64,000 bases of DNA, from the IMG/VR virus record IMGVR_UViG_3300045921_000730, positions 1 through 64,000 of that record; one strand, written 5' to 3'. Below are positions 4,651 to 49,711 of this stretch, piece by piece. The translations under genes were made by a program, and so were the position numbers. The notes under the pieces are model-generated. The model worked only from the letters and a program-made list of their open reading frames with translations, was not told the origin of the DNA and made no database searches. The stretch's first letter is position 1. Each line of letters starts with the position of its first letter.

Positions 4651-5028
4651 TTATCTAAAACTTAAGAAATAATAATTTTTATGCGTTTCAACTACATGAG
4701 TGGGATCTACTTTAACCAAAGACGTATAAATTTTTATTGTTGCAAAAAACAAATATACTGTATACCAAAAAGCAATACTGAAGAAAATATCAATCAATAA
4801 TGATGATACAAATATTGAAAATAACACACCCATTGTTGTCGTAAACATTCCCGTTCCAAGTATGAAAAGTAAGTGTTTATCAGATTTTCGTATGTCACTA
4901 TGAAATTTATGTATTAAATTAAACAATCGATTAAGATCAACTAATAAAATTAATGACCACGAAATACAAAAACCCATCCAGTAAGCATATATTGTTGGTA
5001 TATGTTCTATTAAAGTAAAAGGCATCAT
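4651..5028 (-). CDS. hypothetical membrane protein
   Basis: Three hydrophobic segments. Confidence 0.55.
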   Translation of the reverse strand: MMPFTLIEHIPTIYAYWMGFCISWSLILLVDLNRLFNLIHKFHSDIRKSDKHLLFILGTGMFTTTMGVLFSIFVSSLLIDIFFSIAFWYTVYLFFATIKIYTSLVKVDPTHVVETHKNYYFLSFR

Positions 5029-5039
5029 TTTTTATCTCT

Positions 5040-5399
5040 TTATTCTGATTCGAGTTTTTCTAACCTCTTTTGATGATATTTCAAGAGTTGATTTTGGTCA
5101 TCAATTTTGCCGTCTAGGTTATCTAATCTAAAATCTTGCTCTTCGTTTTTTAAATTTATATCGTTTAAACTTTTTGCTATCATTGCTGATGGTGGTATTT
5201 TAATATTTTTGTTGATGACAAAACCAACAGCAATCCCAAGAATAATAATCAACATTATTCTTACAGACCAATATTTGAGGCAAGCATGAAATCCTTTTTT
5301 GTCTCGTGATAAAAGAAACCAAGTTTTTTTCATTTTTGCGTCCTTATTTTTTGATCTTGACATTATATATTTATTTATGTGAACTATATTAATCATCAT
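5040..5399 (-). CDS. hypothetical single-pass membrane/coiled-coil protein
   Basis: TM segment IMLIIILGIAVGFVI followed by a coiled-coil-like tail. Confidence 0.55.
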   Translation of the reverse strand: MMINIVHINKYIMSRSKNKDAKMKKTWFLLSRDKKGFHACLKYWSVRIMLIIILGIAVGFVINKNIKIPPSAMIAKSLNDINLKNEEQDFRLDNLDGKIDDQNQLLKYHQKRLEKLESE

Positions 5400-5422
5400 A
5401 TCTTAATTTTTGAAGTGTTTTG

Positions 5423-5430
5423 TATAAATA
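5423..5430 (+). promoter_or_regulatory. T4-type late promoter TATAAATA (also at 13288, 50110, 61773, 63132)
   Basis: Exact TATAAATA shortly upstream of plus-strand genes. Confidence 0.65.
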
Positions 5431-5440
5431 CATATAAGTT

Positions 5441-5842
5441 ATGAAAACAGAGACATCAAAGATGACAGAACGAAGAATAATGAACGAAGACGCAAACTCA
5501 AATTCATTGTTGGTATCTCAAAAAGCGTCTGTTGTCTTGGATATAAAAGATATAATTGTTGTTGTTAGTACCGCTATATCAATCACGCTTTCGTGGGCAA
5601 CGATGAGTTCAAGAATTACTCTCTTAGAACAAAGAATTCAGCAGTACGAAAAACAATTCGAAAAACTTGAAAATAAATATGAATCTTTGGGAAATAAAGT
5701 CGATGGTGGTGTCAAATATTTAACACCACCAAATAATCAATACGAAAAACAAATCGAAAAGCTTGAAAATAAATATGAATCCTTGGAAAATAAAGTCAAT
5801 AGTGGCGTCAAATATTTGACGCCACCAAACAATCAACACTAA
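5441..5842 (+). CDS. membrane protein with coiled coil and duplicated 32-aa C-terminal unit
   Basis: TM IIVVVSTAISITLSW, then QYEKQ(F/I)EKLENKYESLxNKVxxGVKYLTPPNN twice. Confidence 0.65.
   Translation: MKTETSKMTERRIMNEDANSNSLLVSQKASVVLDIKDIIVVVSTAISITLSWATMSSRITLLEQRIQQYEKQFEKLENKYESLGNKVDGGVKYLTPPNNQYEKQIEKLENKYESLENKVNSGVKYLTPPNNQH
5642..5833 (+). repeat. 96-bp in-frame tandem duplication (2 copies)
   Basis: 5642-5737 and 5738-5833 align with scattered substitutions. Confidence 0.9.
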
Positions 5843-6597
5843 ACCGAAATTCCTAAATCTTCACAGGCAACAATCCAGTTTTTGACTTTTTCGCTTCTAA
5901 CAATATCGTTAGATGTAAATTTAATAACACTAAATGAAGAAATTCGGTTTGCAACTTGAATAAATTTGTCAAATCCTGTTTCTTCGTGGCGGCTTCTTAG
6001 ATCAGTTTGTGGTAGATCGCCAACGATAATAATACGTGAATATTCGCCGAGTCTTGTCATAATTGAATTTAACTCATGGAAGTTCATGTTTTGAGCCTCA
6101 TCAACAATAACAATTGTTCTGTCCCATGTTAAGCCACGAATGAATGATGTTACTGAAAAATGAACTTTCCCAGCATCTTTCATATCTCTATATGTGCTAA
6201 GTCTACCAATCAGTTCATAAAACATGTTTTCGTATGGTAATTCATAATGCATAATTTTTTCGTCAAGCGTTCCGGGCATGTGTCCAATATTTCTTGTTGC
6301 AACAGCAGAACGAATAATAATAATTTTATCTATCGCACTATCTTTTCTTAAGAGTTCATTTAAAGCAAGATACACAGCAAGAAATGTTTTCCCCGTTCCT
6401 GCTGAACCATGGCCACATATATCTTTTCCAGATATAAAGTCATGCATCATTTCACGTTGCGTATCCGTAAGAGGTTGCACGTGCTGTAAATCGTGATAAG
6501 ACCATACTTTTCTTGCAGGACCTTCTCTCATTGCTTGTTCATTAAGGACAAGCGCTTGCGTAAGCTCAATAACATTGCTTCTGCGTTTTTTAGACAT
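5839..6597 (-). CDS. phoH: PhoH-family ATPase
   Basis: Walker A GSAGTGKT, RSAV, SFIRGLTW, IVDEAQNM, GDLPQTD, DIVRS. Confidence 0.95.
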   Translation of the reverse strand: MSKKRRSNVIELTQALVLNEQAMREGPARKVWSYHDLQHVQPLTDTQREMMHDFISGKDICGHGSAGTGKTFLAVYLALNELLRKDSAIDKIIIIRSAVATRNIGHMPGTLDEKIMHYELPYENMFYELIGRLSTYRDMKDAGKVHFSVTSFIRGLTWDRTIVIVDEAQNMNFHELNSIMTRLGEYSRIIIVGDLPQTDLRSRHEETGFDKFIQVANRISSFSVIKFTSNDIVRSEKVKNWIVACEDLGISV

Positions 6598-6758
6598 TGT
6601 TTTCCTCCTAAAAGTAAAAGAATAAGTGTACTACCAGGAATCAAGATAAAGAAAAGAAAAAGCAGAGTGGTGTGGAAAAGAGAAAATTTAAAAAACAATT
6701 TTTTTATTCTCTGTGGTTGAGGTACACTTTTATTTATTTTTGTGGGGCATAAAAATAA

Positions 6759-6812: not shown

Positions 6813-7106
6813 TTATGACCAGTTATCTTTTGATCCTAAATTATAAACGTTACTATAACCAAATTGGATTAAATAATTGCCGGCTGCTTTAACGTTTTCG
6901 TCATCATCACTTTCTCCAAACAGAATAAAGTTAGTAGTCTTTGGATGTTTAAATAAAGATGAAACATTTCTCAAAGAGACGTTAATTGCATTTGGTAAAG
7001 ATCCGTCTCTAAATTGAACAGGACTTCTCACATCAATTAACAACCCGCCCTTATCAATTAATTTCTTTGCTTTCTGTGGTGTAATTCTTTGTACATTAAA
7101 CATCAT
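6813..7106 (-). CDS. rhodanese-like domain protein
   Basis: LLIDVRSPVQFRDGSLPNAINV...GYSNVYNLG. The usual catalytic Cys is not evident. Confidence 0.8.
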   Translation of the reverse strand: MMFNVQRITPQKAKKLIDKGGLLIDVRSPVQFRDGSLPNAINVSLRNVSSLFKHPKTTNFILFGESDDDENVKAAGNYLIQFGYSNVYNLGSKDNWS

Positions 7107-7666
7107 ACTTCTCCTTCAAGAGCCTTGCGTTCGCTTTCAAGGTTGCGGTTAATTGCTCGATTTGCATCAAACTTATCGGGAAATCTCACACGTAGCTTTT
7201 CAATACCTCGATCTAATAGCCGTTCCCAATCTAAATTGTTTGCATCGCAAAGTATAGCTTGATACCAGTTTAAGTCAAACATTTCTTCACCAAGATGAAC
7301 ACGATTTAATGGTTTTCCTTGAATTACTTGTTGAAGGATTTCAACTAATTCCGTGCTTTCCGTAGCAATTCCTAAAATTCCATGAAATAAACGTGGATCA
7401 ACATTAATTTCAGGTTGAAGAAGTAGTGGTGTGTTTCCTCTCTTGTTTAATTGTTGAGAAATAAGCTCAATTGTGCTTGAACATTCAGACCACGTTTCGG
7501 ATGAAATTGGTTTACCATAAAAGACATTCTTTTTAACCATATCAAGCATGGTTCCGACAGCTATATAAATTTGCAGCAATCGGACTAGACTGTTTTTATC
7601 AAAACTTACTTTTTCAATCGTGCTTTCTGTCCGTGTTGCCAAAGGAATGAATTCTTGCAAATTCAT
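7103..7666 (-). CDS. MazG-like nucleotide pyrophosphohydrolase
   Basis: HGILGIATESTELVE...EEMFDLNWY...KLRVRFPDKF. Confidence 0.8.
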   Translation of the reverse strand: MNLQEFIPLATRTESTIEKVSFDKNSLVRLLQIYIAVGTMLDMVKKNVFYGKPISSETWSECSSTIELISQQLNKRGNTPLLLQPEINVDPRLFHGILGIATESTELVEILQQVIQGKPLNRVHLGEEMFDLNWYQAILCDANNLDWERLLDRGIEKLRVRFPDKFDANRAINRNLESERKALEGEV

Positions 7667-7735: not shown

Positions 7736-7951
7736 TCACTTAAAAATTCTTTCAAAAGAATCAGCTGTTTGTTTTGCTAATTTAATTTTTGTGTTAATAA
7801 TATCAGTTGTCCATTGTATGGACAACTCAATCGATTTGTTGTACAAATTATATTGATGTTGAAAGTACTTTAGAGTGTTAACAGGAGCAGTAGCAAATGG
7901 TTCAAACCATTTGCTGTTTTGTTTAAAAAGGTCTTGTTGAAAAGTATCCAT
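7736..7951 (-). CDS. hypothetical protein
   Basis: 71-aa ORF, helical composition. Confidence 0.5.
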   Translation of the reverse strand: MDTFQQDLFKQNSKWFEPFATAPVNTLKYFQHQYNLYNKSIELSIQWTTDIINTKIKLAKQTADSFERIFK

Positions 7952-8015
7952 ATTTGTTTTTGATGAATTAACAACGATTAGTTTTGGTCCACCTGTTTTG
8001 TTTTAAGTTAATTTG

Positions 8016-8088
8016 AGCGGCTGGCCGGTCTCGAACCGGCGACATTCTGCTTGGCAAGCAGATATTCTTCCAACTGAATTACAGCCGC
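8016..8088 (-). tRNA. tRNA-Gly(GCC)
   Basis: GCGGCTG/CAGCCGC acceptor stem, CTGC-TTGCCAA-GCAG anticodon arm, GGTTCGAGACC T-arm. Followed by CAA, not CCA. Confidence 0.93.
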
Positions 8089-8199
8089 AAAATATTTTTT
8101 GTCAACTACTAGTTTTTGTTTTAAGACGACCAGCAGTTCACAATATACTTTATTTATATTAAAATTTCTAAATATTTATTGTTATTGAGAGTATATGTT

Positions 8200-8955
8200 A
8201 TGGTACAAAAATATAGGACAATTTGGGTTTCAGATATTCACCTTGGTACAAAAGGATGTCAGGCAAATTTGTTGTTAGATTTCTTAAAACACACCGAAAC
8301 AGATTATTTGATATTAGTTGGTGATATTATAGATTTTTGGGCATTGAAACGAAGTTCTTATTGGCCTGCCGAACACAACACAGTTATTCAAAAAATTCTT
8401 AAATTGTCAAGACATGGAACTAAAGTAATTTTTATACCAGGTAACCACGACGAAACGTTGAGAAGTTATGTTGGTCATAATTTTGGTGATATACAACTTC
8501 ATGAAGAATATATACATCAATTAGCTGACGGAAAAAAAATTTTATGTATTCACGGCGATTTGTTTGATGCTGTAACAGCATATCATAAATGGTTAGCAAT
8601 TGCTGGTGATATAAGTTATAATTTTTTGTTGTGGTTAAATAGACACTTTAATTGCTTAAGAAACAGAATTGGTCTTGGATATTGGTCTTTATCTGCTTTT
8701 ATTAAGTTAAAAGTAAAAAAAGCTGTTAATTTTATCAGTAATTATGAAGAAAATGTTGTAAAATATGCAAAGATTAAAAATGTTGATGGTGTTTTGTGTG
8801 GTCACATACATCACGCTGAAATGAAAATGATAGATAATATTTTATACTTAAATGATGGTGATTGGGTTGAATCCTGCACCGCAATAGTGGAGAACTATAA
8901 TGGAAAACTTGAACTCATACGCTGGACTACCAAAAAGAATATTAATAATAACTGA
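8200..8955 (+). CDS. LpxH-family metallophosphoesterase, PlcP-like phospholipase C
   Basis: SDIHLG, LVGDIID, IPGNHDE, IHGDLFD, CGHIHH, NDGDWVESCTA. Whole-length resemblance to PlcP/UDP-2,3-diacylglucosamine hydrolase family. Confidence 0.85.
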   Translation: MVQKYRTIWVSDIHLGTKGCQANLLLDFLKHTETDYLILVGDIIDFWALKRSSYWPAEHNTVIQKILKLSRHGTKVIFIPGNHDETLRSYVGHNFGDIQLHEEYIHQLADGKKILCIHGDLFDAVTAYHKWLAIAGDISYNFLLWLNRHFNCLRNRIGLGYWSLSAFIKLKVKKAVNFISNYEENVVKYAKIKNVDGVLCGHIHHAEMKMIDNILYLNDGDWVESCTAIVENYNGKLELIRWTTKKNINNN

Positions 8956-9964
8956 TGCGTGGCAGCCTCAGATAAATGGAGTCGTAAGAACATTACAAAC
9001 AACGGTTGATTTAATTACCAAAAAGGGAATTGACGTTTTTGTAATTCATCCAAAAATGTTCGATACGATTGAGTGTCCGTTTTATAAAGAAATTTCTCTT
9101 GTAATAAGTCAAAAACAAGCAACTGAAAAAATTAAGCAAACGGTTGAAACTTTTCGTCCGTTATATATCCACATTGTTACAGAAGGTCCGTTGGGCTACG
9201 CAGGAAGAAAGTTTTGCATTAAAAATAACTTGCGATTTACTACAGCATACCATACCAAATATCCTGAATATATGCAAAAAATGTTTCCTTGGATTCCATT
9301 TATTAAACAAATAACTTATGCATATGTTAAAAATTTCCACAATGCATCATCAAATGTGATGGTTGCTTCAACTGCCCTGCAAGATGAACTTGCAATGAAA
9401 GGATTTAAAAATTTGGTCCTTTGGGGAAGGGGAGCAAATTTGTTGTTGTTTAACCCAGCGGTTCAATCAACTTCTCCTTTTGACCACAAATATGCTTTAT
9501 ATGTCGGTCGGATTTCCAAAGAAAAACAAATTGAGAATTTTCTTAATACCAACACAAAAAAATATGACAACATGAAAAAAGTTGTTGTTGGTGATGGACC
9601 AGAACTAAATCGCTTAATGAAAAAATATCCAAACGTAATTTTTGTAGGAAAAAAGACCGGATTGGAGCTAGCAAATTATTATAGACATGCTTCAGTTTTT
9701 TGCTTTCCAAGCAAGACTGATACATATGGTTTGGTTGTGGCAGAAGCGTTAGCTTCAGGTGTTCCGGTTGCTGCTTACAAAACTCCAAATATTGAAGCTA
9801 TAGTAAATGATCAAGTTGCTGGACTGCACGAAACTGATTTCCAACAAGCAATTGATCTTGCATTGAAAAAAGACAGAACTGCATGCAGAAAGTATGCTGA
9901 AAAGCAGTTTCATTGGGACAAATGTACTAGACAATTCCTTATAAATTTAATATCGGTACAGTGA
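8900..9964 (+). CDS. GT4 glycosyltransferase, Agt-like
   Basis: ITDAWQPQINGVVRTL, HIVTEGPLG, TTAYHTKYPEY, YVGRISKEKQ, FPSKTDTYGLVVAEALASGVPVAA. Confidence 0.88.
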   Translation: MENLNSYAGLPKRILIITDAWQPQINGVVRTLQTTVDLITKKGIDVFVIHPKMFDTIECPFYKEISLVISQKQATEKIKQTVETFRPLYIHIVTEGPLGYAGRKFCIKNNLRFTTAYHTKYPEYMQKMFPWIPFIKQITYAYVKNFHNASSNVMVASTALQDELAMKGFKNLVLWGRGANLLLFNPAVQSTSPFDHKYALYVGRISKEKQIENFLNTNTKKYDNMKKVVVGDGPELNRLMKKYPNVIFVGKKTGLELANYYRHASVFCFPSKTDTYGLVVAEALASGVPVAAYKTPNIEAIVNDQVAGLHETDFQQAIDLALKKDRTACRKYAEKQFHWDKCTRQFLINLISVQ

Positions 9965-10034: not shown

Positions 10035-10454
10035 ATGAAAATCAATGAAATTTTGTCAGAAAGTTTTTGGAGCACTGCAAAGGCTGTCGGTTCTGCATTG
10101 GCAGGTGCAGCAACTGGTACTGGCCGAGAGATTGTGAGGGGAGCCAAAGCAGTTGTTTTGCCTGGGGTTCGAATTGTAAAAGCAGGAGCTGAAGGTTATT
10201 CGAGATCTAAAATTAAAACATCTAAACAATCAATTGTGCAGGCCATTGATGAGTTGCTGGCGCGTGGTCTTTCAGATAATGAAATTCAACAACTGATTTC
10301 TCAACGTATTCAATATCAAAAAATGAAAGCGGCAGGTATGTCAGATCAACAAATTCATGATAAACTTAAGTTCGATCAAGAAACAGAAAATTTTGTGAAA
10401 AAACAACTAGAAAAGCAAAAATCTGAAAAACAACAAACGGCTCGAATTAAATAA
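10035..10454 (+). CDS. hypothetical protein (putative virion internal protein)
   Basis: AGAAG RBS-like sequence; MKINEILSES N-terminus. Confidence 0.6.
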   Translation: MKINEILSESFWSTAKAVGSALAGAATGTGREIVRGAKAVVLPGVRIVKAGAEGYSRSKIKTSKQSIVQAIDELLARGLSDNEIQQLISQRIQYQKMKAAGMSDQQIHDKLKFDQETENFVKKQLEKQKSEKQQTARIK

Positions 10455-10573: not shown

Positions 10574-10969
10574 TTAATTGCTTTGGCTACAAGCAAGTTT
10601 CATTGTATTTGCGCCGTGTCCTGGTTGAACATTTTCCCAAAGTCTATTTTTTGCGTTTAAAACTTCAAAAACGACATTTGCATTTTCGTCGTATCCAACA
10701 ATTGAAACAACTCTGTTAATTTTTCTTTTACAATCAATTTCGATAATACCATCAATTAGAAATATTTGTGTTATTTTTTGGTGCGCTTCTGTCGTTTGAC
10801 CAATTTTGTGGATTGAAATTGTTTCAGGATCTATATATGTAACGGAAGTTATATCAACAAAATAATCAATGTATTGATCTCTTCCCACAAATATATAATT
10901 TGAATCTTCAGCCTGTACACTACCACAAAATAAGTTAATTAATAATATCAAAATTATTTTTTTCATCAA
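10574..10969 (-). CDS. secreted/periplasmic protein
   Basis: Signal peptide ending VQA-E; two Cys. Similar in plan to 22090..22569 and 31439..31900. Confidence 0.55.
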   Translation of the reverse strand: MMKKIILILLINLFCGSVQAEDSNYIFVGRDQYIDYFVDITSVTYIDPETISIHKIGQTTEAHQKITQIFLIDGIIEIDCKRKINRVVSIVGYDENANVVFEVLNAKNRLWENVQPGHGANTMKLACSQSN

Positions 10970-12293: not shown

Positions 12294-13256
12294 TCAGTCT
12301 AAGATTAAACTAATAGACTGTTTATGATCAATTCGTGTAATTGTCTCAGCGAGCAGCCCAGATATTGATATTTGTTCAATCTTTGGATTATTTTTCATAC
12401 TATCAGGTAATTTAACACTATCAGTTATAAACAACATTTTTAGTTTTGAGTTTAAAATGTTTTCGTTTGCTTTTCCCGATAATACACCATGTGTAGCATA
12501 TGCAACTACTTGCTTAGCACCCTTTTCTATCAAAGCATCAGCAGCTTTACCAAGCGTTCCAGCAGTATCGACCATATCGTCTATAATAATACAAGTTTTG
12601 TTTTCAACATCACCAATAATGTTCATTACTTCAGAAACGTTTGCGTTTGGTCTTCTTTTATCAACAATTGCCAAATCAATATTATCCAGATGTTTGGCAA
12701 CTGACCTGGCTCTTGCTACACCCCCAACGTCTGGGGAAATAATAATTGGATTTTCAGATATCCAGTTCTTATAAATTGATGCAACAAACAAATGTGTTGC
12801 TGAAATGTTATCGACAGGGATTTTATAAAACCCTTGAATTTGTGTAGCGTGTAAATCGACAGTAATCAAGTGATCAATACCAGAATACTGCAAAATATCA
12901 GCAACAACTCTCGCTGATATTGGCACTCGTGAATAACCTGGTCTTCTATCTTGTCTTGAATAACCCAAGTATGGGATTACAGCAATGACTCTTTTTGCAC
13001 TAGAACGTTTGAGAGCATCAGCAAGGAGCGCCGTTTCCATTAACGAATCGTTACAGGGCGGCGAAATGCTGGAAACAATAAAAGCTCTTTGGCCTCTTAC
13101 GTTTTGTTGAATTTCAATTCGTGTTTCGCCATCACTAAATTTTTCATTAATAAATTTACTTACATAAGTTTGGGTTCGCTCAATTTCTGTTTTAAGATGT
13201 TTACAAATTCCATCTTTTATAGATGAAGAAACGTTTCCAAAAAATAAAACGCTCAT
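12294..13256 (-). CDS. prs: ribose-phosphate pyrophosphokinase
   Basis: KFSDGET, PYLGYSRQDR, DLHATQIQGFY, SPDVGGVARA, IIDDMVDTAGT, ATHGVLSG. Confidence 0.96.
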   Translation of the reverse strand: MSVLFFGNVSSSIKDGICKHLKTEIERTQTYVSKFINEKFSDGETRIEIQQNVRGQRAFIVSSISPPCNDSLMETALLADALKRSSAKRVIAVIPYLGYSRQDRRPGYSRVPISARVVADILQYSGIDHLITVDLHATQIQGFYKIPVDNISATHLFVASIYKNWISENPIIISPDVGGVARARSVAKHLDNIDLAIVDKRRPNANVSEVMNIIGDVENKTCIIIDDMVDTAGTLGKAADALIEKGAKQVVAYATHGVLSGKANENILNSKLKMLFITDSVKLPDSMKNNPKIEQISISGLLAETITRIDHKQSISLILD

Positions 13257-13650: not shown

Positions 13651-14907
13651 TCATTCAAATTTCACTGTAGTGCCATGTGGTGCAACAACATTAGTCTTAT
13701 AAGCAAGCCAAAGAGTGGGAGCATAGTCAGGATCCCCCCATGTACTACATTCCATGTCAGTGAAACAAACTAATTGCTTGGGCACAATTTCTTCCCCTTT
13801 CAGAAATTCCCAGATGCAATTGAAGTCTGTTCCTCCATCACCTTTAATTTCATAATCGTAAATTTCTTGGACATTTTCCTCGGTGAACGTCTGGCGGTTG
13901 TAGACTTGAGTATCAAAAGATGCAACGTTAATTTTAAATGAAGCGTGCTGTTGCATAATGCCAACTACTTCTGACATGAATACCTTGATTTCGTCAGGTC
14001 CAATGGACCCAGACGCGTCCAAGAATATATCAGCTTCTACTGTAGGTTCGCGTTGCATTGAAGGAAGAACTGCATCACACAACCAACCACGACGATTCGG
14101 GCGCATATAGGTGAAATCATTCTTAATTTGAGATTCAATTTGTTGAACCAAGAGTTCTTTCCAATTCATCTTGGGTTCTGTCAAATCCTTGATCAAGCGA
14201 CGGACACCAAGGGGAACATTGCCTACGCCATGAGCCTGGACCGAAGACATTATCGCATCACGAAGTTCGTCCCTGATCTCCGACAGTTCTTTCTCAGACA
14301 GACGTGGTTTTCCATTTGGATCTTCATCATCTCCCTCAGTGTCATTACCAGCATCAGATTCCAGGTGCTCATCAAGCACTTGAGATAACAGACTGTCGAT
14401 AGAAATTTTCTCTGCATCTTCCATGAGCCTCTCGTAGATCTCTTCCGCAGACATGTCTTTGAATTGCGGATCAAAGAGGCAAGGAAACGTGGTGATTTTC
14501 TCGCCGATCTTGAATTCAATTAGATCTCGGTTGACTGCATAGTCAGCAGCAATGTTCCAAAGTTGGGCATTGCGATCAAGGCAACGTCCGCTTTTGCCCA
14601 CATGTTCATAGACAGCATGAAGAATTTCATGTCCTATTAAGAAAATCACTTCTCGAGGTTTGAGCATATTGACAAATTTAGAATTGTACCAAAGTGTCCG
14701 CCCATCGGTTGCGGCAGTGGGACACCAGTCAACATCACTCACTAGTCTCAAGCGAGATGCAATATTGCCCCAGAACGGGGTGTGCATAAGCATCGCAATT
14801 CGCGCTACTATGATTGCTTGTTCTGCTTGGCTTTTCTCGGCAGCAGTAGGTTCGCCTTTGATTTTTTCCAACAACGTTGGATCATTGATTTTGGATTTAG
14901 ACGTCAT
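13651..14907 (-). CDS. metallopeptidase-like (HExxH) + VWA-like domain protein
   Basis: TAATDG, GHEILH, WNIAADYAVN; MIDAS-like DASGS, FDT, GDGGTDF. Confidence 0.85.
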   Translation of the reverse strand: MTSKSKINDPTLLEKIKGEPTAAEKSQAEQAIIVARIAMLMHTPFWGNIASRLRLVSDVDWCPTAATDGRTLWYNSKFVNMLKPREVIFLIGHEILHAVYEHVGKSGRCLDRNAQLWNIAADYAVNRDLIEFKIGEKITTFPCLFDPQFKDMSAEEIYERLMEDAEKISIDSLLSQVLDEHLESDAGNDTEGDDEDPNGKPRLSEKELSEIRDELRDAIMSSVQAHGVGNVPLGVRRLIKDLTEPKMNWKELLVQQIESQIKNDFTYMRPNRRGWLCDAVLPSMQREPTVEADIFLDASGSIGPDEIKVFMSEVVGIMQQHASFKINVASFDTQVYNRQTFTEENVQEIYDYEIKGDGGTDFNCIWEFLKGEEIVPKQLVCFTDMECSTWGDPDYAPTLWLAYKTNVVAPHGTTVKFE

Positions 14908-15076
14908 CTGTGGTTTTCCTTGAACGATCGTACTTTAATAGGTAGTAGACTTTAACTTGTTCCAGCATTTCTTTCAACACCAAATCATTCTCTGCTTGCA
15001 TTCTGATCGAGTGCCAAAGCTGACTCTCTTTCATGGAATTGCGTAGCTTAGATATAGTATTTGGGTCTACCATTTC

Positions 15077-16168
15077 TTAAACTTGTGTGGCCTTAAGGAT
15101 CAATGAACCAAAGCGTTCATGGAACTCCTTAAAGTTGGTCAGTTTAGAAGGCGTGAACGGAAGGTGATACTGTTGCAACATGACGCGAATTGCCATCACC
15201 ATCACTTCAGTCGTCAAACAATCCATAAAGAACCGTAGTACATTGTCTGCCTTGTTGTACCAGTTTTTATCCTTTTCGTCGTGTGCTGCCTTGAGTTCAT
15301 AAGCACAGGAAATTGCCAAAGAATACATCGCAGAGATTTCTTTGGTTTTCAACTTTTTGACTTTTCCTTCCAGCACATCCTTCGGATTTGGAAGATTCGA
15401 TGAATTCTTACGGTGAGCCAGGAACTTCAATGCCATCCCCTCACCGACGGTGCCTGCAATTAAATCCGCAATCACAGATTCGTCGAGTTGTGGGTCTTTT
15501 AGGAATTCTGAAACGAATTCCCATGAACGAGGAGTAGCAAAGGATCTGCTAGAGCTTTTTGGATCGAAATCAAATAGACTGTTCTTGCTAAACTCGATAA
15601 AGCTCACTACGTCTGGGTGGATTTGATTATCCATTGCCCAGCGTGACCAAGAATCTGCGTCAACCCGCAACTCAACGTGAACAAACCGATTGGCTAGTGG
15701 AGCAGGTTGACGATAAGTCACGCCCCTATCTGAGTCTCGGTTACCTGCAGCGAAAATTACACAATTCTCAGGGAGCTTGTATGTCCCAACTCCTCGATCA
15801 AGGACTAGTTGATATGCCGCAGCTTGTACAGAAGGCGCAGCTGAGTTCATTTCGTCGAGGAAAAGGAACACCACAGGGTACTTGGACGCTTCCTCTTCCG
15901 TAGGAAGATCGACCGGAGGAGCCCATTCCATCTTATTGGATTCTTTGTTATAGTATGGAATACCTCGGAGGTCGGTCTGTTCACATTGCGAAAGACGCAC
16001 ATCATAAAACCTACCGCCCATCTCAGCGCAAAGTTGCGCTACCATAGAACTCTTACCTACACCCATCGGACCCCAGATGAATACTGGTCGCTTAATACGA
16101 GCACACGAACGCAACACTTTCATAAGTTGTTGACCAGTCACAGTACGGGTCGTTGAAATTTCAGCCAT
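15077..16168 (-). CDS. MoxR-like AAA+ ATPase
   Basis: Walker A GPMGVGKS, Walker B FLFLDEMN, AAGNR, PLANRF, TPRSWE; paired with the VWA gene. Confidence 0.9.
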   Translation of the reverse strand: MAEISTTRTVTGQQLMKVLRSCARIKRPVFIWGPMGVGKSSMVAQLCAEMGGRFYDVRLSQCEQTDLRGIPYYNKESNKMEWAPPVDLPTEEEASKYPVVFLFLDEMNSAAPSVQAAAYQLVLDRGVGTYKLPENCVIFAAGNRDSDRGVTYRQPAPLANRFVHVELRVDADSWSRWAMDNQIHPDVVSFIEFSKNSLFDFDPKSSSRSFATPRSWEFVSEFLKDPQLDESVIADLIAGTVGEGMALKFLAHRKNSSNLPNPKDVLEGKVKKLKTKEISAMYSLAISCAYELKAAHDEKDKNWYNKADNVLRFFMDCLTTEVMVMAIRVMLQQYHLPFTPSKLTNFKEFHERFGSLILKATQV

Positions 16169-36247: not shown

Positions 36248-37477
36248 TTATGTCGTTTTATAAAAATCAATAAAACTAACTAAACGCTTCAACGAGGATG
36301 CCTTAGGCATTTCTACCTTTGGTCTTAATTCCTCTCGACGTCTGTAATCGGCTAATTCGTCCGATGTAAATCCATAAAGATCGTCAAGACCTTTAAGTAA
36401 AATGTTCATTGCAGCATTCAAGTCTCGATCATGTAATGAACCACAAGACGGGCAGGTCCATTCTCTTACCGAGAGTTCCATGCTAGCCATCTTGTGACCA
36501 CAACATGAGCAAAGTTTTGAACTCGGATAGAAGGTGTCAATCTGTTGAAATGACCGACCATACCAGTTGCTCTTGTATGCAACCATAGACACAAAGGATG
36601 ACCAAGAAACATCTTGTATGGACTTAGCCAATCTGCGGTTCTTTACCATGCCCTTAACGTTCAGCTTTTCCATGCAAATGGTATCGTAGTTGTTCACTAA
36701 CCAAGTAGATAGATTATGGTAGAACCAGTTTCGTTGATTGGTTATTTTTTGATGGTTTTTAGCAACCTTGATTCTTTGCTTATTCCAACGATTTGACCCT
36801 TTAACCTTACGACTTAAATGCTGCTGTGCTCTTTTAAGTTTAGATTGGCTTTCTCTAAACCACCTTGGGTTTGAAATCTTCAGGCCATTACTCATGACTA
36901 TCAAGTCTTTCAACCCGAGATCAATACCGATAGAGCGACCGGTATTTGGTTTCAATTCTAGCTCTTCTTCAACTAGAACTGAAACAAAATACTGACCAGA
37001 AGGATTTCTTGAAATTGTCACTGATTTAGGGGCGCCATTGAATTTCCGATCAACCACCATCTTCATTGGAGACATTTTCGTGAGTTTGATTGTTCCAGCA
37101 TCTAAATCAAATGCCTTCATTCCACCCAATGATGCAGCAGGGATCCTAAACGAATCACGTGATTTCCCTTTGCATTTGAACTTCATCCGCCCAAGTTTAA
37201 CGGCTCGTTTCTTGTTGAAGAATTGCTTTTTGGTCTCATCAAAGTCCATTCGCCTTTGTTGCAAAGCATAACTGATGACTTCTTTTAGCCAAGGATATCT
37301 AGGATCGTCTTTCAAGGTCTTTTCAGTGACTGTTTGAGTTGGACCATCCTTAGACCAAGAATTAAAGTTGGCTACCAGTTGATTCCAGACGAATCGGACG
37401 CAACCAAAGTTCTGCAACAAGAATTGCTCTTGCTCTTTTGTTGGATACAGTCGGTATTTGTAAGCTCTTAGAATCAT
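36248..37477 (-). CDS. tnpB: TnpB nuclease (IS607-derived element lacking tnpA)
   Basis: LRAYKYRLYPT; RuvC GIDLG / MEKL / HDRDLNAA; Zn ribbon CSCCG..CPSCG. Start trimmed to MILRAYKY. Confidence 0.95.
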   Translation of the reverse strand: MILRAYKYRLYPTKEQEQFLLQNFGCVRFVWNQLVANFNSWSKDGPTQTVTEKTLKDDPRYPWLKEVISYALQQRRMDFDETKKQFFNKKRAVKLGRMKFKCKGKSRDSFRIPAASLGGMKAFDLDAGTIKLTKMSPMKMVVDRKFNGAPKSVTISRNPSGQYFVSVLVEEELELKPNTGRSIGIDLGLKDLIVMSNGLKISNPRWFRESQSKLKRAQQHLSRKVKGSNRWNKQRIKVAKNHQKITNQRNWFYHNLSTWLVNNYDTICMEKLNVKGMVKNRRLAKSIQDVSWSSFVSMVAYKSNWYGRSFQQIDTFYPSSKLCSCCGHKMASMELSVREWTCPSCGSLHDRDLNAAMNILLKGLDDLYGFTSDELADYRRREELRPKVEMPKASSLKRLVSFIDFYKTT

Positions 37478-37681
37478 TGAACCTGTATAAATAAAATCGT
37501 ATGGGACAGCCCAGTCACCTGTAGCTGAGGTTGGAGTTCCTGCTAAGAACTTCCTAACCATACATCTATTTATGCAAAAAGATATTTGGTCATCGCTTCT
37601 ATATAATTTTTACAGGAATTTTATAGTTGTTGATTGAAATGGAAATTTACATACAATATTGATACTTTAAGGAAGACAACG

Positions 37682-40812: not shown

Positions 40813-42240
40813 ATAAACTACCGCGTAGCTAAAGACAACGCGGTTTTCCTGCTCCCCATGTCAACTCCAAAAATGCTTGAAGATCTCTCGATTTTAGCGA
40901 CATGTTTTTGCAAGGACGTTGGGATCACTCCCACTTCGGGCATCTCACCCGAAGGAATAAGTTGATCATAGCAATCTAGCTGACCAAAGTTTTTAATGTT
41001 GATAGCAGCATTTAAGTCTCGATCATGTTCAGTACCACAACCAGGGCAATGCCATTCCCGAGTACCAAGATCAAGTTTCTCAAGTTTGTGCCCACAGCAC
41101 GAACACGTCTTGCTAGATGGAACAAACGGATCAATTTGATGGAATGTCCTACCAGCAGAGGCTGACTTGCAGGAAATCATGGAAACAAGCGTTGACCAAG
41201 CAGTTTCATGGATTTTTCTTGAGAGTTTTCTGTTCTTCAACATTCCAGAAGCATTCAAGTTCTCCATGTAAATGGTATCAAAGTTTTGAATCAAGTAGGA
41301 GCTAATGTTGTGGTAGTACCAATTTCTAATGTTGGCAATCTTCTCGTAGCACTTAGCTACTTTGATTCGTTGAGCTTCTCTGTTCTTACTGCCTTTAGTC
41401 TTTCTTGCTAAAATGCGCTGCTGCTTCTTAAGTGCTAACTTGGCTTTCGCTAGCATTGCTTCAGGATGTTGGAATTTGAGTCCGGTTGAAAGGACGCAGA
41501 GGTCCTTCAAACCAAGATCAATCCCCACTTCTTGCTCGGTAGAAGGTAGAACTGAAACATCTTCTTCTACCAAGATGGAAACAAAAAACTTACCTGACGG
41601 AGTCTTTGACACTGTAGCTGATTTGATGGTTCCTTCGAACTTTCTGTCTAGAGCAATCTTGACATTCTTGATCTTTGGTAACTTGACTGTGCTGTTCTCA
41701 AAATCAACTTTGACATCACGAGTCCTGTAGGACTGATAATTTGATTTAGACTTGAATCTGGGTGCTTGTAGCTTTGGACCTTTTCGTTTTCCGGTGATAG
41801 AATTTAAGAAGTTTTGGTATGCTGTGTGCAGGTCTTCGGCTGCATGTTTCAAACACCAGTCGTCAATTTCTCTGAGCCAAGCAGTTTCTGGTTGTTTCTT
41901 GAGTTGAGTAATCTGTACGTTGATGTCGTAGTTGTTCAGATGTTTTTCTTTGTTGGCAAATCGTTGTTTGTTTTCGTGGAGGTAATGGTTGAAAATCCAA
42001 CGCTTGGCACCAAAGAACTGTGTTAGCAGCGCCTCTTCTGCTTTGTTTGGATACAACCTATACTTGTATGCTCTTAATTCCACTTGACAAACCTTTGTTG
42101 TTCTGTTATAATCTATTTATGCTTTTTCATGTTTCGATATGACAATTTCAGGAGATTTTTCGATGTTGTTTGATCTAGATCAAAAACTTGACCAATTCAT
42201 CCACGCGACTAAAAATCACGTGGTTTCCTTGGTCTAATTG
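40813..42240 (-). mobile_element. tnpB: IS1341-like (tnpB-only) element with family A ends; tnpB CDS 40818..42083
   Basis: LE CCACGTGA-TTTTTAG-TCGCGTGGATGAA and RE CCGCGTTGTCTTTAGCTACGCGGTAG match family A; RuvC D/E/D intact; Zn ribbon present. Confidence 0.93.
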
Positions 42241-48469: not shown

Positions 48470-49711
48470 TTATAAAATCGCTGGACACTTCAACGAAGTA
48501 GCCAATGTCGTACCGACCACTGGTCTTAGCACTTCTCGATGTCTGTTCTCGACTGATTCGGCCGAGTTCAATTCTCTGTTGCCTCTTTTGATCCAGTTGA
48601 CCAGATCTCTAGAAGCTTCTTGTTCGATGTTCTTAGCAGCATTCAAGTCACGATCATGCACTGAACCACAAGATGGGCAGGTCCATTGACAGACATCTAG
48701 TGATTTCTTTCCATCATGATGACCACAAGTAGAACAAACTTGACTAGAAGCAAAGTAACGATCAACCTTGGCAAATTCCTTACCATACCAATCACATTTG
48801 TAGCTGATCTTAGTGACCAGTGAAGACCAACTCGCATCTGCAATGTTCTTGTTTCGAGTCTTATTTTTAGACTGCATCATCTCTTGAACAGCTAGATCTT
48901 CAAGATAGATGTAGTCGTAGTTCTCGACAAGCCACTTAGAAAACTCATGTTGCAGGTGTTCTCGTCGGTTGGTGATTTTCAAATAGATACGATTGACCTT
49001 CAGCTGCTGTCTCTTACGACGATTGCTTCCCTTTTGTTTGCGACTCAAATGCTGTTGTGCTTTCTTCAGTTTCACTTGGCTTTCGTGAAACCATCTTGGA
49101 TTAGTTAGTCTATGGCCGTCACTAAGAACGGCTAGATCAGCTAGACCAAGATCAATACCTACAGCATGATAGGTATTTGGTAAAGGTTCTGGTTTTGCTT
49201 CTTCAACCAGAACTGAAACAAAATACTGACCAGAAGGGTTTCTTGAAACTGTCACTGATTTAGGTATTCCATTGAATTTCCTGTCAACAACCATCTTCAT
49301 TGGAGTCATCTTTGGGATGACAATTTGACCAGTCTCGCACATCTCAAGATTTGCTTTTGGAAGCACAGAACCAGGAATCCTAAACGAATCTCGTGATTTC
49401 CCTTTGCATTTGAACTTCATTCGGCCAAGTTTAACTGCTCGTTTCTTGTTGAAGAATTGCTTCTTGGCCTCTTCAAAGTCCATTCGTTTTTGTTGCAAAG
49501 CGTAGCTAATGACTTCTTTCAACCAAGGATATCTAGGATCGTCTTTCAAGGTCTTTTCTGTGACCGTCTGAACTGGTTTGTCCTTAGACCAAGAATTGAA
49601 GTTAGCTACAAGTTGGTTCCAAACAAAGTGGACTGCACCAAAGTTTTGTAGCAAGAATTGCTCTTGCTCTTTGGTTGGATATAACCGATACTTGTATGCT
49701 CTTAGGACCAT
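48470..49711 (-). CDS. tnpB: TnpB nuclease of an IS607-family element
   Basis: RuvC GIDLG / LEDL / HDRDLNAA, Zn ribbon; lies downstream of a tnpA fragment. Confidence 0.95.
   Translation of the reverse strand: MVLRAYKYRLYPTKEQEQFLLQNFGAVHFVWNQLVANFNSWSKDKPVQTVTEKTLKDDPRYPWLKEVISYALQQKRMDFEEAKKQFFNKKRAVKLGRMKFKCKGKSRDSFRIPGSVLPKANLEMCETGQIVIPKMTPMKMVVDRKFNGIPKSVTVSRNPSGQYFVSVLVEEAKPEPLPNTYHAVGIDLGLADLAVLSDGHRLTNPRWFHESQVKLKKAQQHLSRKQKGSNRRKRQQLKVNRIYLKITNRREHLQHEFSKWLVENYDYIYLEDLAVQEMMQSKNKTRNKNIADASWSSLVTKISYKCDWYGKEFAKVDRYFASSQVCSTCGHHDGKKSLDVCQWTCPSCGSVHDRDLNAAKNIEQEASRDLVNWIKRGNRELNSAESVENRHREVLRPVVGTTLATSLKCPAIL

What the first reader, a model, noticed from the sequence alone, without database searches (positions are those of the whole stretch)
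8200..9964. Phage-borne PlcP + Agt-like operon: phosphate-starvation membrane lipid remodelling as an auxiliary metabolic module
SEEN: overlapping LpxH-family metallophosphoesterase and GT4 glycosyltransferase genes, about 1.6 kb from phoH. KNOWN: in alphaproteobacteria and marine heterotrophs, the phospholipase C PlcP and glycosyltransferase Agt convert phospholipids to DAG and glycolipids under P limitation. INFERRED: the phage could release phosphate from host membranes for DNA synthesis or alter the envelope.
Basis: partly seen in the sequence, partly recalled or inferred. Interest (0 to 1): 0.6.

Follow-up and report, generated by a model that had tools for sequence, protein, structure and literature searches.

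The report
Phage-borne PlcP–Agt lipid remodelling operon
A giant bacteriophage from hot-spring microbial mats carries the bacterial two-gene kit that swaps phosphorus-containing membrane lipids for sugar lipids, and hundreds of other viral contigs carry related kits that databases currently label as a cell-wall (LpxH) enzyme.

Summary
A 251-aa metallophosphoesterase gene (8200-8955, +) overlaps a 354-aa GT4 glycosyltransferase gene (8900-9964, +) by 56 nt, 1.6 kb from phoH. The record is a 244-kb myovirus-type jumbo-phage fragment.

The esterase is not LpxH:
- It scores 45-48 bits against LpxH cut-offs of 134 and 190.
- It has GNHD where true LpxH has GNRD.
- Its bacterial homologues coexist with a genuine LpxH.
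- True LpxH sits on a very long, fully supported branch in the tree.

It belongs with bacterial plcP genes that are followed directly by agt, including a Paraburkholderia plcP-agt-dagK operon arranged like the characterised B. cenocepacia one. The transferase keeps the His/Asp dyad, both UDP-sugar motifs and 3 of 4 DAG-binding residues reported for SAR11 GTcp.

The pair is conserved in all four related phage contigs, with dN/dS of 0.06 and 0.15. At least 576 IMG/VR contigs encode relatives. Among the best 80, 70 of the 78 with enough downstream sequence have a glycosyltransferase directly downstream.

Enzyme identity is well supported. The role (freeing phosphorus, or changing the envelope) is inferred: I found no Pho box and no RNA runs, and the host is unknown. 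I found no paper describing phage-encoded PlcP.

The parts
8200..8955 (+). plcP-like gene: PlcP-type metallophosphoesterase (phospholipase C family), 251 aa. Motifs: D12-x-H14, G41-D42, G81-N-H-D84, H118-G-D, G201-H-x-H204. A helical insertion spans about residues 119-192.
8900..9964 (+). agt-like gene: GT4 (GT-B fold) retaining glycosyltransferase of the Agt/GTcp diacylglycerol-glycosylating clade, 354 aa. Carries H118, R177, the GRISKEKQ motif, the FPSKTDTYG motif, E282 and W339.
8900..8955 (+). 56-nt overlap of the two reading frames. It suggests co-transcription and possibly coupled translation. An overlap is also present in L004 and L005; in L008 a 58-aa ORF lies between the two genes.
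8137..8165 (+). Sigma-70-like promoter candidate (TTCACA-17-TAAAAT) in the 111-nt spacer between the tRNA gene and the esterase start. This is a consensus match only.
   Evidence: No Pho-box-like repeats in 7952-8199.
8015..8088 (-). tRNA-Gly(GCC), divergent from the operon. It marks the upstream edge of the + strand cassette. Conserved at the same place in L004.
7103..7666 (-). Context: MazG-like pyrophosphatase. Conserved next to the module in the related phages.
6813..7106 (-). Context: rhodanese-domain protein. Conserved in the related phages.
5839..6597 (-). Context: phoH, a Pho-regulon-type phage auxiliary gene. Conserved in the related phages. It also lies two genes upstream of the module in the unrelated viral contig L057.
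10935..11468 (-). Context: peptide deformylase.
12294..13256 (-). Context: ribose-phosphate pyrophosphokinase (prs), which makes the nucleotide precursor PRPP.

Best explanation
The two overlapping genes are a phage copy of the bacterial plcP-agt lipid-remodelling operon.

Inferred from family membership:
- The esterase is a metal-dependent phospholipase C of the PlcP type. It cuts the phospho-headgroup off host glycerophospholipids (PE, PG or PC) and leaves diacylglycerol (DAG) in the membrane.
- The GT4 enzyme then transfers glucose or glucuronic acid (possibly galactose) from a UDP-sugar onto that DAG. This makes phosphorus-free glycolipids (MGDG/GADG) and keeps the bilayer intact.

Inferred from context:
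- During infection this converts a large phosphorus store, the membrane, into soluble phospho-headgroups. Host phosphatases can turn these into phosphate for nucleotide and DNA synthesis.
- The cassette sits in an auxiliary-gene island with phoH, mazG, prs, thyA and a deformylase.
- The genome is about 340 kb (244,293 bp / 0.72), so each copy needs about 6.8e5 phosphorus atoms.

Shown here: gene structure, family membership, conservation, synteny and purifying selection. Not shown: activity, substrates, timing of expression and fitness benefit.
For: 1. It is not LpxH.
- LpxH equivalog models score 48 and 45 bits against cut-offs of 134 and 190.
- PDB LpxH chains match only at E 1e-4, and they show GNRD where the phage has GNHD.
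- GNHD is present in 180 of 180 PlcP-type sequences; GNRD is present in both true LpxH sequences.
- Paraburkholderia and Variovorax have a true LpxH (223 and 201 bits) at a separate locus. In Variovorax the phage-like homologue scores only 36 bits.
- Azospirillum and Caulobacter have only the sub-cut-off type.
- In the 182-row tree, true LpxH sits on a 100%-supported branch of about 5 substitutions per site on each side.

2. It is PlcP-type.
- It is 53-61% identical to alpha- and betaproteobacterial genes.
- In 65 of 94 bacterial loci those genes are followed directly by the Agt-like GT4. This is the 'type 2' plcP context of PMC4796936.
- The Paraburkholderia nodosa locus reads esterase-GT4-DAG kinase. 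That matches the experimentally characterised B. cenocepacia plcP-agt-dagK operon (PMC13691135).
- The fold is LpxH-like, with a helical insertion where LpxH has its lipid-binding cap.

3. The transferase is Agt/GTcp-type.
- Alignment A3 keeps G27, G96, G99, H118, R177, R204, K209, D274, T275, G277, E282 and W339. The motifs read GRISKEKQ and FPSKTDTYG.
- These correspond, by consistent numbering offsets, to the GTcp residues whose mutation abolished or almost completely abolished activity. They include the His104/Asp256 dyad, in which Asp replaces the usual GT4 Glu (bioRxiv 10.1101/2021.03.25.437072).
- Some JGI homologues are named 1,2-diacylglycerol 3-alpha-glucosyltransferase/glucuronosyltransferase.

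4. The phage context is real and under selection.
- The same phoH-rhodanese-mazG-[esterase+GT4]-(PDF)-HNH synteny occurs on 262-kb and 355-kb contigs; PDF is absent in L008.
- dN/dS between the window and L004 is 0.057 for the esterase and 0.148 for the GT.
- Viral esterases and viral GT4s each cluster together in their trees, and the two trees agree.

5. There is a link to phosphorus.
- phoH is nearby here and in L057.
- In the isolated Pelagibacter phage Mosig the homologue is divergent from pstS.
Against: - I had no sequence of a characterised PlcP or Agt (SMc00171, MED193_17359, PB7211_983/960, atu2297, PA3219/3218, BCAL2364/5). The link runs through same-family or same-genus relatives and published residue numbering.
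- There are no Pho-box-like repeats upstream, and the host and its PhoB motif are unknown.
- No RNA run holds the region.
- The held 244 kb has no pstS and no UDP-glucose dehydrogenase. I did not search it for phosphatases. Phosphate release and UDP-sugar supply would therefore depend on the host.
- One reported DAG-binding residue differs (GTcp Thr162 -> Gly176) and Phe258 -> Tyr276.
- The cap region of the esterase model has low confidence (pLDDT 46-69).
- The source is hot-spring and microbial-mat samples, where phosphorus limitation is not established.
Confidence: 0.6

Rival explanations
1. The enzymes are the same (PlcP + Agt), but the benefit is a changed envelope rather than phosphorus supply. 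Replacing phospholipids with glycolipids could alter receptor display or membrane properties. That could block superinfecting phages, blunt host defences that act on the membrane, or stabilise the membrane of a cell carrying very large virions until lysis.
For: - There is no Pho box upstream and the cassette has its own sigma-70-like promoter.
- The held genome has no pstS.
- Published work links lipid remodelling to phage attachment and membrane protein content (PMC9938194, listed; PMC9804370).
- 39 of the 80 best viral loci pair the esterase with a different transferase, a GT2. That fits selection for a surface or lipid product.
Against: - The module repeatedly sits beside phosphorus- and nucleotide-related auxiliary genes: phoH here and in L057, pstS in Mosig, and prs, mazG and thyA here.
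- The glycolipids are inner-membrane and bulk lipids, not known phage receptors.
- The two roles do not exclude each other.
Confidence: 0.2
2. The esterase acts on a non-lipid phosphoester, for example nucleotides or a signalling molecule of a host defence system. The GT4 would then modify some other acceptor. The resemblance to plcP-agt would reflect ancestry rather than current function.
For: - The metallophosphoesterase superfamily is very broad. PHROGs places weak matches under DNA repair exonuclease and phosphatase families.
- No activity has been measured for any viral member.
- The viral clade is long-diverged from the bacterial ones.
Against: - The esterase is 53-61% identical to bacterial plcP-context genes over its full length, and the helical cap insertion is kept.
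- 70 of the 78 assessable viral loci keep a glycosyltransferase immediately downstream.
- The GT keeps 3 of 4 reported DAG-binding residues and the clade-specific Asp.
- Purifying selection acts on both genes.
Confidence: 0.1
3. This is a lipid A / LPS module: a true LpxH (UDP-2,3-diacylglucosamine diphosphatase) with an LPS glycosyltransferase. That is how current annotation and KEGG-based viral surveys label such genes.
For: - Automatic names: 'UDP-2,3-diacylglucosamine hydrolase' in the records for phages Mosig and S-SRM01 and on many JGI and NCBI homologues.
- The top structural matches are LpxH.
- Viral lpxH is listed as an LPS auxiliary gene in PMC10653327 and PMC9611531.
Against: - It falls below both LpxH equivalog cut-offs.
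- It has GNHD, not the GNRD of LpxH.
- Its homologues coexist with a genuine LpxH in betaproteobacteria. They are the only LpxH-model match in the two alphaproteobacteria searched, which have no match over the LpxH cut-off.
- A very long branch separates it from LpxH.
- No lpx genes are nearby.
Confidence: 0.03
4. This is an artefact: bacterial DNA mis-assembled into a viral contig, or a decaying passenger.
For: - The cassette is a small + strand island among - strand genes.
- One IMG/VR locus (L010) groups tightly with Paraburkholderia and may be bacterial.
Against: - GC content matches the rest of the phage (0.33).
- The same insertion point and neighbours occur on independent contigs from JGI, NCBI, ENA and Logan.
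- Both frames are intact, with dN/dS of 0.06-0.15.
- Runs filed under 8 studies hold the region. Some may be the source sample or one data set filed twice, so this is not fully independent support.
Confidence: 0.02

Closest known systems
Bacterial PlcP-Agt lipid remodelling pathway. Characterised members: S. meliloti SMc00171; Phaeobacter MED193_17359; SAR11 HTCC7211 PB7211_983/PB7211_960 (GTcp); A. tumefaciens Agt atu2297; P. aeruginosa PlcP/Agt1/Agt2; B. cenocepacia BCAL2364-2366.
   Same: - Same two protein families in the same order (esterase first, GT4 directly after).
- All metal-binding motifs are present in the esterase.
- The GT has the His/Asp dyad and both UDP-sugar motifs.
- The phage proteins are 56% and 41% identical to the Paraburkholderia plcP-agt-dagK genes, and 56% and 46% to the Thalassospira pair.
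   Different: - It is encoded by a jumbo phage.
- No Pho box was recognised and there is no dagK.
- The two genes overlap by 56 nt.
- The viral copies form their own clusters in both trees.
- GTcp Thr162 is Gly here.
- The environment is a hot-spring mat, not ocean or soil.
LpxH (UDP-2,3-diacylglucosamine diphosphatase, lipid A pathway)
   Same: - Same superfamily and overall fold: a metallophosphoesterase core with a helical insertion at the cap position. Foldseek ranks 1-24 are all LpxH, at E about 1e-10.
   Different: - 18-22% identity in those structural alignments.
- Below the family cut-offs.
- GNHD instead of GNRD.
- A separate paralogue in genomes that also have a true LpxH.
- No lipid A genes nearby.
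Phosphorus-related phage auxiliary genes (phoH, pstS, phoA of T4-like cyanophages and pelagimyophages)
   Same: - A host-derived gene carried in a hypervariable auxiliary island next to phoH and mazG.
- The homologue in Pelagibacter phage Mosig lies beside pstS.
   Different: - Those genes import phosphate or scavenge it from outside the cell. This module would mine the host's own membrane.
- I found no description of it in the searched papers.

Membership tests
PlcP (metallophosphoesterase-type phospholipase C) | Calcineurin-like metallophosphoesterase domain with a complete set of metal-binding motifs | tested here: met
   Pfam Metallophos 5.9e-14. D12, H14, D42, N82, H83, D84, H118, H202 and H204 are invariant in A1.
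PlcP (metallophosphoesterase-type phospholipase C) | Groups with plcP orthologues and apart from the LpxH paralogue | tested here: met
   In the tree, true LpxH is split off at 100% support on a very long branch. The paralogues coexist in Paraburkholderia and Variovorax. E-values are about 1e-93 to 1e-104 against alpha- and betaproteobacterial plcP-context genes.
PlcP (metallophosphoesterase-type phospholipase C) | BLAST E < 1e-40 to a characterised PlcP (the criterion of PMC4796936, with MED193_17359 as query) | not testable with these tools
   No tool gave me a characterised sequence. As a surrogate, the phage esterase is 56% identical (E 2e-93) to the Paraburkholderia nodosa gene heading a plcP-agt-dagK operon. 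PMC13691135 reports >72% identity among Burkholderia PlcP orthologues.
PlcP (metallophosphoesterase-type phospholipase C) | Linked to a gene that uses DAG to make a phosphorus-free lipid (agt, pgt or btaBA) | tested here: met
   An Agt-type GT4 overlaps its 3' end. The same arrangement occurs in 65 of 94 bacterial loci and 31 of 78 viral loci.
PlcP (metallophosphoesterase-type phospholipase C) | Pho-regulon control (a Pho box upstream) | tested here: inconclusive
   There are no 7-mer direct repeats at 11-nt spacing, and nothing within 6 mismatches of the E. coli consensus, in 7952-8199. The host and its PhoB motif are unknown.
PlcP (metallophosphoesterase-type phospholipase C) | Phospholipase C activity on PC, PE or PG releasing DAG | not testable with these tools
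   This needs a biochemical assay or lipidomics.
Agt / GTcp clade of GT4 (DAG glucosyl/glucuronosyl-transferase) | GT-B fold with GT4 N- and C-terminal domains | tested here: met
   Pfam Glyco_transf_4 + Glycos_transf_1. The model has pLDDT 92. Top folds are MshA, BshA and PimA.
Agt / GTcp clade of GT4 (DAG glucosyl/glucuronosyl-transferase) | Catalytic His/Asp dyad (Asp in place of the usual GT4 Glu) and the motifs GRVAxEKN and FPSxTDTFG | tested here: met
   H118 and D274 are present, with GRISKEKQ and FPSKTDTYG. All are invariant or near-invariant in A3. The mapping uses motifs and consistent numbering offsets, not a direct alignment to GTcp.
Agt / GTcp clade of GT4 (DAG glucosyl/glucuronosyl-transferase) | DAG-binding residues His104, Thr162, Arg163, Trp320 | tested here: inconclusive
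   H118, R177 and W339 are kept. The Thr position is Gly176 here and in L004, and Ser or Thr in most homologues.
Agt / GTcp clade of GT4 (DAG glucosyl/glucuronosyl-transferase) | High identity within the clade (46-58% reported) against <25% to other GT4 enzymes | tested here: met
   46% to the Thalassospira plcP-adjacent GT (the genus of GT_tl in the GTcp paper), 41-45% to Paraburkholderia, Cupriavidus and Azospirillum, and 12-20% to solved GT4 structures.
Agt / GTcp clade of GT4 (DAG glucosyl/glucuronosyl-transferase) | Makes MGDG/GADG from DAG and UDP-sugars | not testable with these tools
   This needs heterologous expression and lipid mass spectrometry.
LpxH | Scores above the curated equivalog cut-offs (TIGR01854, NF003743) | tested here: not met
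   45.5 against 190.35 bits and 48.1 against 134 bits.
LpxH | GNRD variant of the third metallophosphoesterase motif. Its role in LpxH is from my recollection of the LpxH structure papers; the residue pattern itself is shown here. | tested here: not met
   The phage has GNHD. E. coli LpxH chains and two above-cut-off LpxH sequences have GNRD.
Phage auxiliary metabolic gene | Host-type metabolic gene inside a bona fide phage genome, conserved in related phages and under purifying selection | tested here: met
   Structural genes are present. Synteny is conserved on 262-kb and 355-kb contigs. dN/dS is 0.057 and 0.148.
Phage auxiliary metabolic gene | Expressed during infection | not testable with these tools
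   No run that holds the region is on record as RNA.

The most novel reading that the evidence does not exclude
PlcP-type phospholipase C genes, usually followed by a glycosyltransferase presumed to act on DAG (Agt-type GT4 or a small GT2), are a widespread and so far unrecognised class of phage auxiliary gene. At least 576 IMG/VR contigs carry a relative, as do the isolates Pelagibacter phage Mosig and Synechococcus phage S-SRM01. On this reading, phages dismantle the host's phospholipid membrane for phosphorus while patching it with sugar lipids, and the 'viral lpxH / LPS biosynthesis' entries in metagenomic surveys are mostly this module under the wrong name.
Probability: 0.45. Interest if true: 0.75.

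Novelty: new member of a known kind. Interest (0 to 1): 0.62.

Why it matters
Known phosphorus-related phage genes (pstS, phoA, phoH) act on uptake, external scavenging or regulation. A phage-encoded PlcP-Agt pair would be an internal route: it would turn the infected cell's own membrane phospholipid into phosphate for viral DNA.

That matters most for jumbo genomes. Each ~340-kb copy needs about 6.8e5 phosphorus atoms. From textbook figures recalled from memory, an E. coli-sized cell holds roughly 2e7 phospholipids. That is a few tens of genome equivalents, but this is an order-of-magnitude inference only.

It would also change how infected cells contribute to environmental lipid pools (MGDG and GADG are used as markers of phosphorus stress). 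It would correct a systematic mis-annotation of viral 'lpxH' as LPS biosynthesis.

It is easy to test. Both genes are small and soluble-type. The bacterial Agt homologues already give clear lipid phenotypes when expressed in E. coli (PMC4796936, PMC13691135), and a cultured phage with a homologue (Mosig on HTCC1062) exists.

Tried and rejected
1. Single-protein pattern scan of IMG/VR. It found nothing because the patterns were too specific. The alignment-based scan succeeded.

2. Megablast of 20 kb of the window against phage records. No match, so there is no close cultured relative.

3. Named reference sequences through the genome search.
- The class-level sample returns no taxon names for centres reached through loci.
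- No GT in the sampled small genomes matched GTcp numbering exactly.
- So I made no direct alignment to GTcp, Agt or a characterised PlcP.

4. Repeated phage promoter motif. The conserved upstream element around 8137-8156 is not repeated across the 244-kb genome.

5. Pho box. None was found.

6. Bacterial donor. L143 and L161 appear as sisters of the jumbo-phage clade. They are high-GC bacterial contigs that share only this one gene with the phage, and the tree flags them as joined long branches. I name no donor.

7. Accessory genes. There is no pstS or UDP-glucose dehydrogenase in the held genome. The second metallophosphoesterase, at genome 129048-130106, is a separate gene.

8. Tools not used.
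- Read laying: only assembled contigs of DNA runs were on offer.
- Complex prediction: I make no binding claim.
- The large representative search: the family was not left open.

Full report
**What is there.**
- The window holds two same-strand ORFs. One is a 251-aa metallophosphoesterase (ATG at 8200, stop at 8955). The other is a 354-aa GT4 glycosyltransferase (8900-9964). They overlap by 56 nt (Pfam).
- phoH ends 1,603 nt upstream, on the other strand.
- The pair, plus a small ORF at 10035-10454, is a + strand island among - strand genes. The neighbours are phoH, a rhodanese protein, a MazG-like pyrophosphatase, tRNA-Gly(GCC) at 8015-8088, peptide deformylase, an HNH endonuclease and PRPP synthetase.
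- GC content is the same as in the rest of the region.

**It is a phage.**
- The window is the first 64 kb of a 244,293-bp IMG/VR record judged 72% complete, so the full genome is about 340 kb.
- Elsewhere the record encodes a baseplate wedge subunit (880 bits), a head-tail adaptor (645 bits), and tail and head-decoration proteins.
- The window itself has an NAD-dependent DNA ligase, thymidylate synthase and an RNA ligase.
- Sequencing runs that hold the region are labelled hot-spring or microbial-mat metagenomes. None is RNA.

**The module is conserved in the phage lineage.**
- Exact look-ups of the closest homologues gave a 3.3-kb contig (esterase 87%, GT 75% identical), a 355-kb and a 55-kb record of one phage, and a 262-kb contig.
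- All carry esterase followed by GT4. The long ones share phoH-rhodanese-MazG upstream and an HNH endonuclease downstream. PDF is present in the 355-kb phage and prs in the 262-kb one.
- Against the closest relative, dN/dS (NG86) is 0.057 for the esterase and 0.148 for the GT, at dS of about 1.1-1.2. Both genes are therefore under purifying selection in phages.

**The esterase is not LpxH.**
- NCBI's two LpxH equivalog models score 48.1 and 45.5 bits against cut-offs of 134 and 190.
- Solved LpxH chains match by sequence only at E 1e-4. They show GNRD where the phage has GNHD.
- Paraburkholderia nodosa and Variovorax rhizosphaerae each have a true LpxH above the cut-off (223 and 201 bits) at a separate locus. 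In Variovorax the phage-like gene scores only 36 bits.
- Azospirillum and Caulobacter have only the sub-cut-off type, at 45-46 bits, the same level as the phage.
- GNHD occurs in all 180 PlcP-type sequences collected, and GNRD in both true LpxH sequences.
- In a 182-row maximum-likelihood tree, the true LpxH sequences sit across a 100%-supported branch of about 5 substitutions per site on each side.
- The predicted structure (pLDDT 81) does resemble LpxH best. Foldseek ranks 1-24 are all LpxH, at E about 1e-10 and 18-22% identity. A helical insertion (residues about 119-192) lies between the HGD and GHxH motifs, where LpxH has its lipid-binding cap. So it is an LpxH-like lipid phosphoesterase fold from a different family.

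**The esterase is PlcP-type.**
- Homologues at 53-61% identity are abundant in alpha- and betaproteobacteria. Of 401 sampled alphaproteobacterial genomes, 145 have one.
- In 65 of 94 bacterial loci examined, an Agt-like GT4 follows directly on the same strand. This is the commonest plcP neighbourhood described by Sebastian et al. (PMC4796936).
- In Paraburkholderia nodosa the order is esterase, GT4, prokaryotic DAG kinase. That is the arrangement of the B. cenocepacia plcP-agt-dagK operon, whose deletion abolishes MGDG/GADG synthesis (PMC13691135).

**The transferase is Agt/GTcp-type.**
- The GTcp paper defines the clade by a His104/Asp256 dyad (Asp replacing the usual GT4 Glu), the motifs GRVAxEKN and FPSxTDTFG, and the DAG-binding residues His104, Thr162, Arg163 and Trp320.
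- The phage protein has H118, D274, GRISKEKQ, FPSKTDTYG, R177 and W339, and also G27, G96, G99, K209 and E282. All are invariant or nearly so among 22 homologues. The numbering offsets are consistent (+11, +14, +18, +19).
- Two positions differ: Thr162 is Gly176 and Phe258 is Tyr276.
- Identity is 46% to the plcP-adjacent GT of a Thalassospira (a genus represented in the published clade), and 41-45% to Paraburkholderia, Cupriavidus and Azospirillum. Identity to the best solved GT4 structures (MshA, BshA, PimA) is 12-20% (model pLDDT 92).
- I could not align it directly to GTcp or Agt, because no tool supplied those sequences.

**The wider picture.**
- Of the best 80, 31 have the GT4 directly downstream, 39 have a 240-aa GT2 (Glycos_transf_2 / Glyco_transf_21 hits), 8 have neither, and 2 end too early.
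- In the esterase tree, 68 of them form a viral-only clade (98% support) within an 84%-supported group that also holds the isolated Pelagibacter phage Mosig. The four jumbo-phage sequences are monophyletic (91%).
- The GT4 tree shows the same clustering of viral copies. The nearest cellular sequences come from low-GC, small alphaproteobacterial genomes. Composition bias is flagged there, so I name no donor.
- In Mosig the gene is divergent from pstS. In the 162-kb contig L057 it lies two genes after phoH.
- One IMG/VR locus (L010) groups with Paraburkholderia and may be bacterial.

**Mechanism and its limits.**
- By family membership, the esterase should cleave phospholipids to DAG plus a phospho-headgroup, and the GT should glycosylate DAG to MGDG/GADG.
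- The most likely benefit is phosphorus for nucleotide synthesis. This rests on the neighbouring genes (phoH, mazG, prs, thyA) and on the large phosphorus demand of a 340-kb genome.
- An envelope-modifying role is a live alternative, and the two do not exclude each other.
- Against a simple Pho-regulon model, no Pho-box-like repeats lie upstream. There is only a sigma-70-like promoter match, and the conserved upstream element is not repeated in the genome.
- The held genome has no pstS and no UDP-glucose dehydrogenase. I did not search it for phosphatases.
- Expression could not be examined.

**Novelty.**
- Full-text searches found no paper that combines PlcP with viral auxiliary genes (0 papers for 'plcP' + 'AMGs').
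- The Mosig and S-SRM01 genome papers do not mention the gene.
- Viral 'lpxH' appears only as an LPS-biosynthesis entry in KEGG-based surveys.
- Subscription journals are not covered by the search.
- I therefore rate this a new (viral) member of a known pathway. It has a plausible wider significance that needs a simple lipidomics test.

Noticed in passing
window 8015-8088 (-); L004 394-469; L005 about 7780-7900; L008 about 7760-7900: tRNA-Gly(GCC) sits directly upstream of the module. In L005 and L008 the alignment shows the conserved 5' and 3' halves of the same tRNA-like sequence separated by about 35 extra bases. ARAGORN calls no tRNA there, so this may be an intron-bearing or decayed tRNA.
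   Followed up: partly
window 36248-37561, 40818-42083, 48470-49711 (all -): Three paralogous transposase genes (phrog_506, 388-435 bits). Two of them lie in stretches of raised GC (0.37-0.41 against about 0.33). That is an unusual load of insertion elements for a lytic-type jumbo phage, and a possible handle on the host.
   Followed up: no
L041 5907-6629, and 38 other IMG/VR loci among L016-L087: In 39 of the 80 best viral loci the PlcP-like gene is followed by a 240-aa GT2 (Glycos_transf_2 / Glyco_transf_21 hits) rather than a GT4. In bacteria, GT21-type Pgt enzymes are the other known plcP partner. The function of this short viral GT2 is open.
   Followed up: partly
L001 (Pelagibacter phage Mosig, MT647606) 4903-6738: The isolated pelagimyophage has a PlcP-like gene (48% identical, annotated as UDP-2,3-diacylglucosamine hydrolase). 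It is divergent from pstS and has no GT4 match. The genome announcement does not mention it.
   Followed up: partly
window 13651-16168 (-): A DUF2201 putative metallopeptidase with a VWA-like domain, next to an ATPase (phrog_1297), lies in the highest-GC stretch of the window (0.449). PHROGs labels the first of these 'HNH endonuclease', which does not fit its Pfam domains.
   Followed up: no
window 10574-10969 (-): A 131-aa ORF with a signal-peptide-like N-terminus and no family match lies between the module and the deformylase gene.
   Followed up: no
G000:C1:102849-114926 (-), outside the window: A single open frame of 4,025 aa lies next to the baseplate wedge gene. I did not examine it.
   Followed up: no
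G000:C1:129048-131893 (+), outside the window: A second metallophosphoesterase (352 aa, Metallophos 38 bits) is followed by a 594-aa ORF. By arrangement it is probably an SbcD/SbcC-type nuclease pair, unrelated to the lipid module.
   Followed up: no
L005/L006 4556-5434; L008 3085-3822: The related jumbo phages encode a Thg1-family protein (tRNA-His guanylyltransferase-like) near thymidylate synthase and DNA ligase.
   Followed up: no
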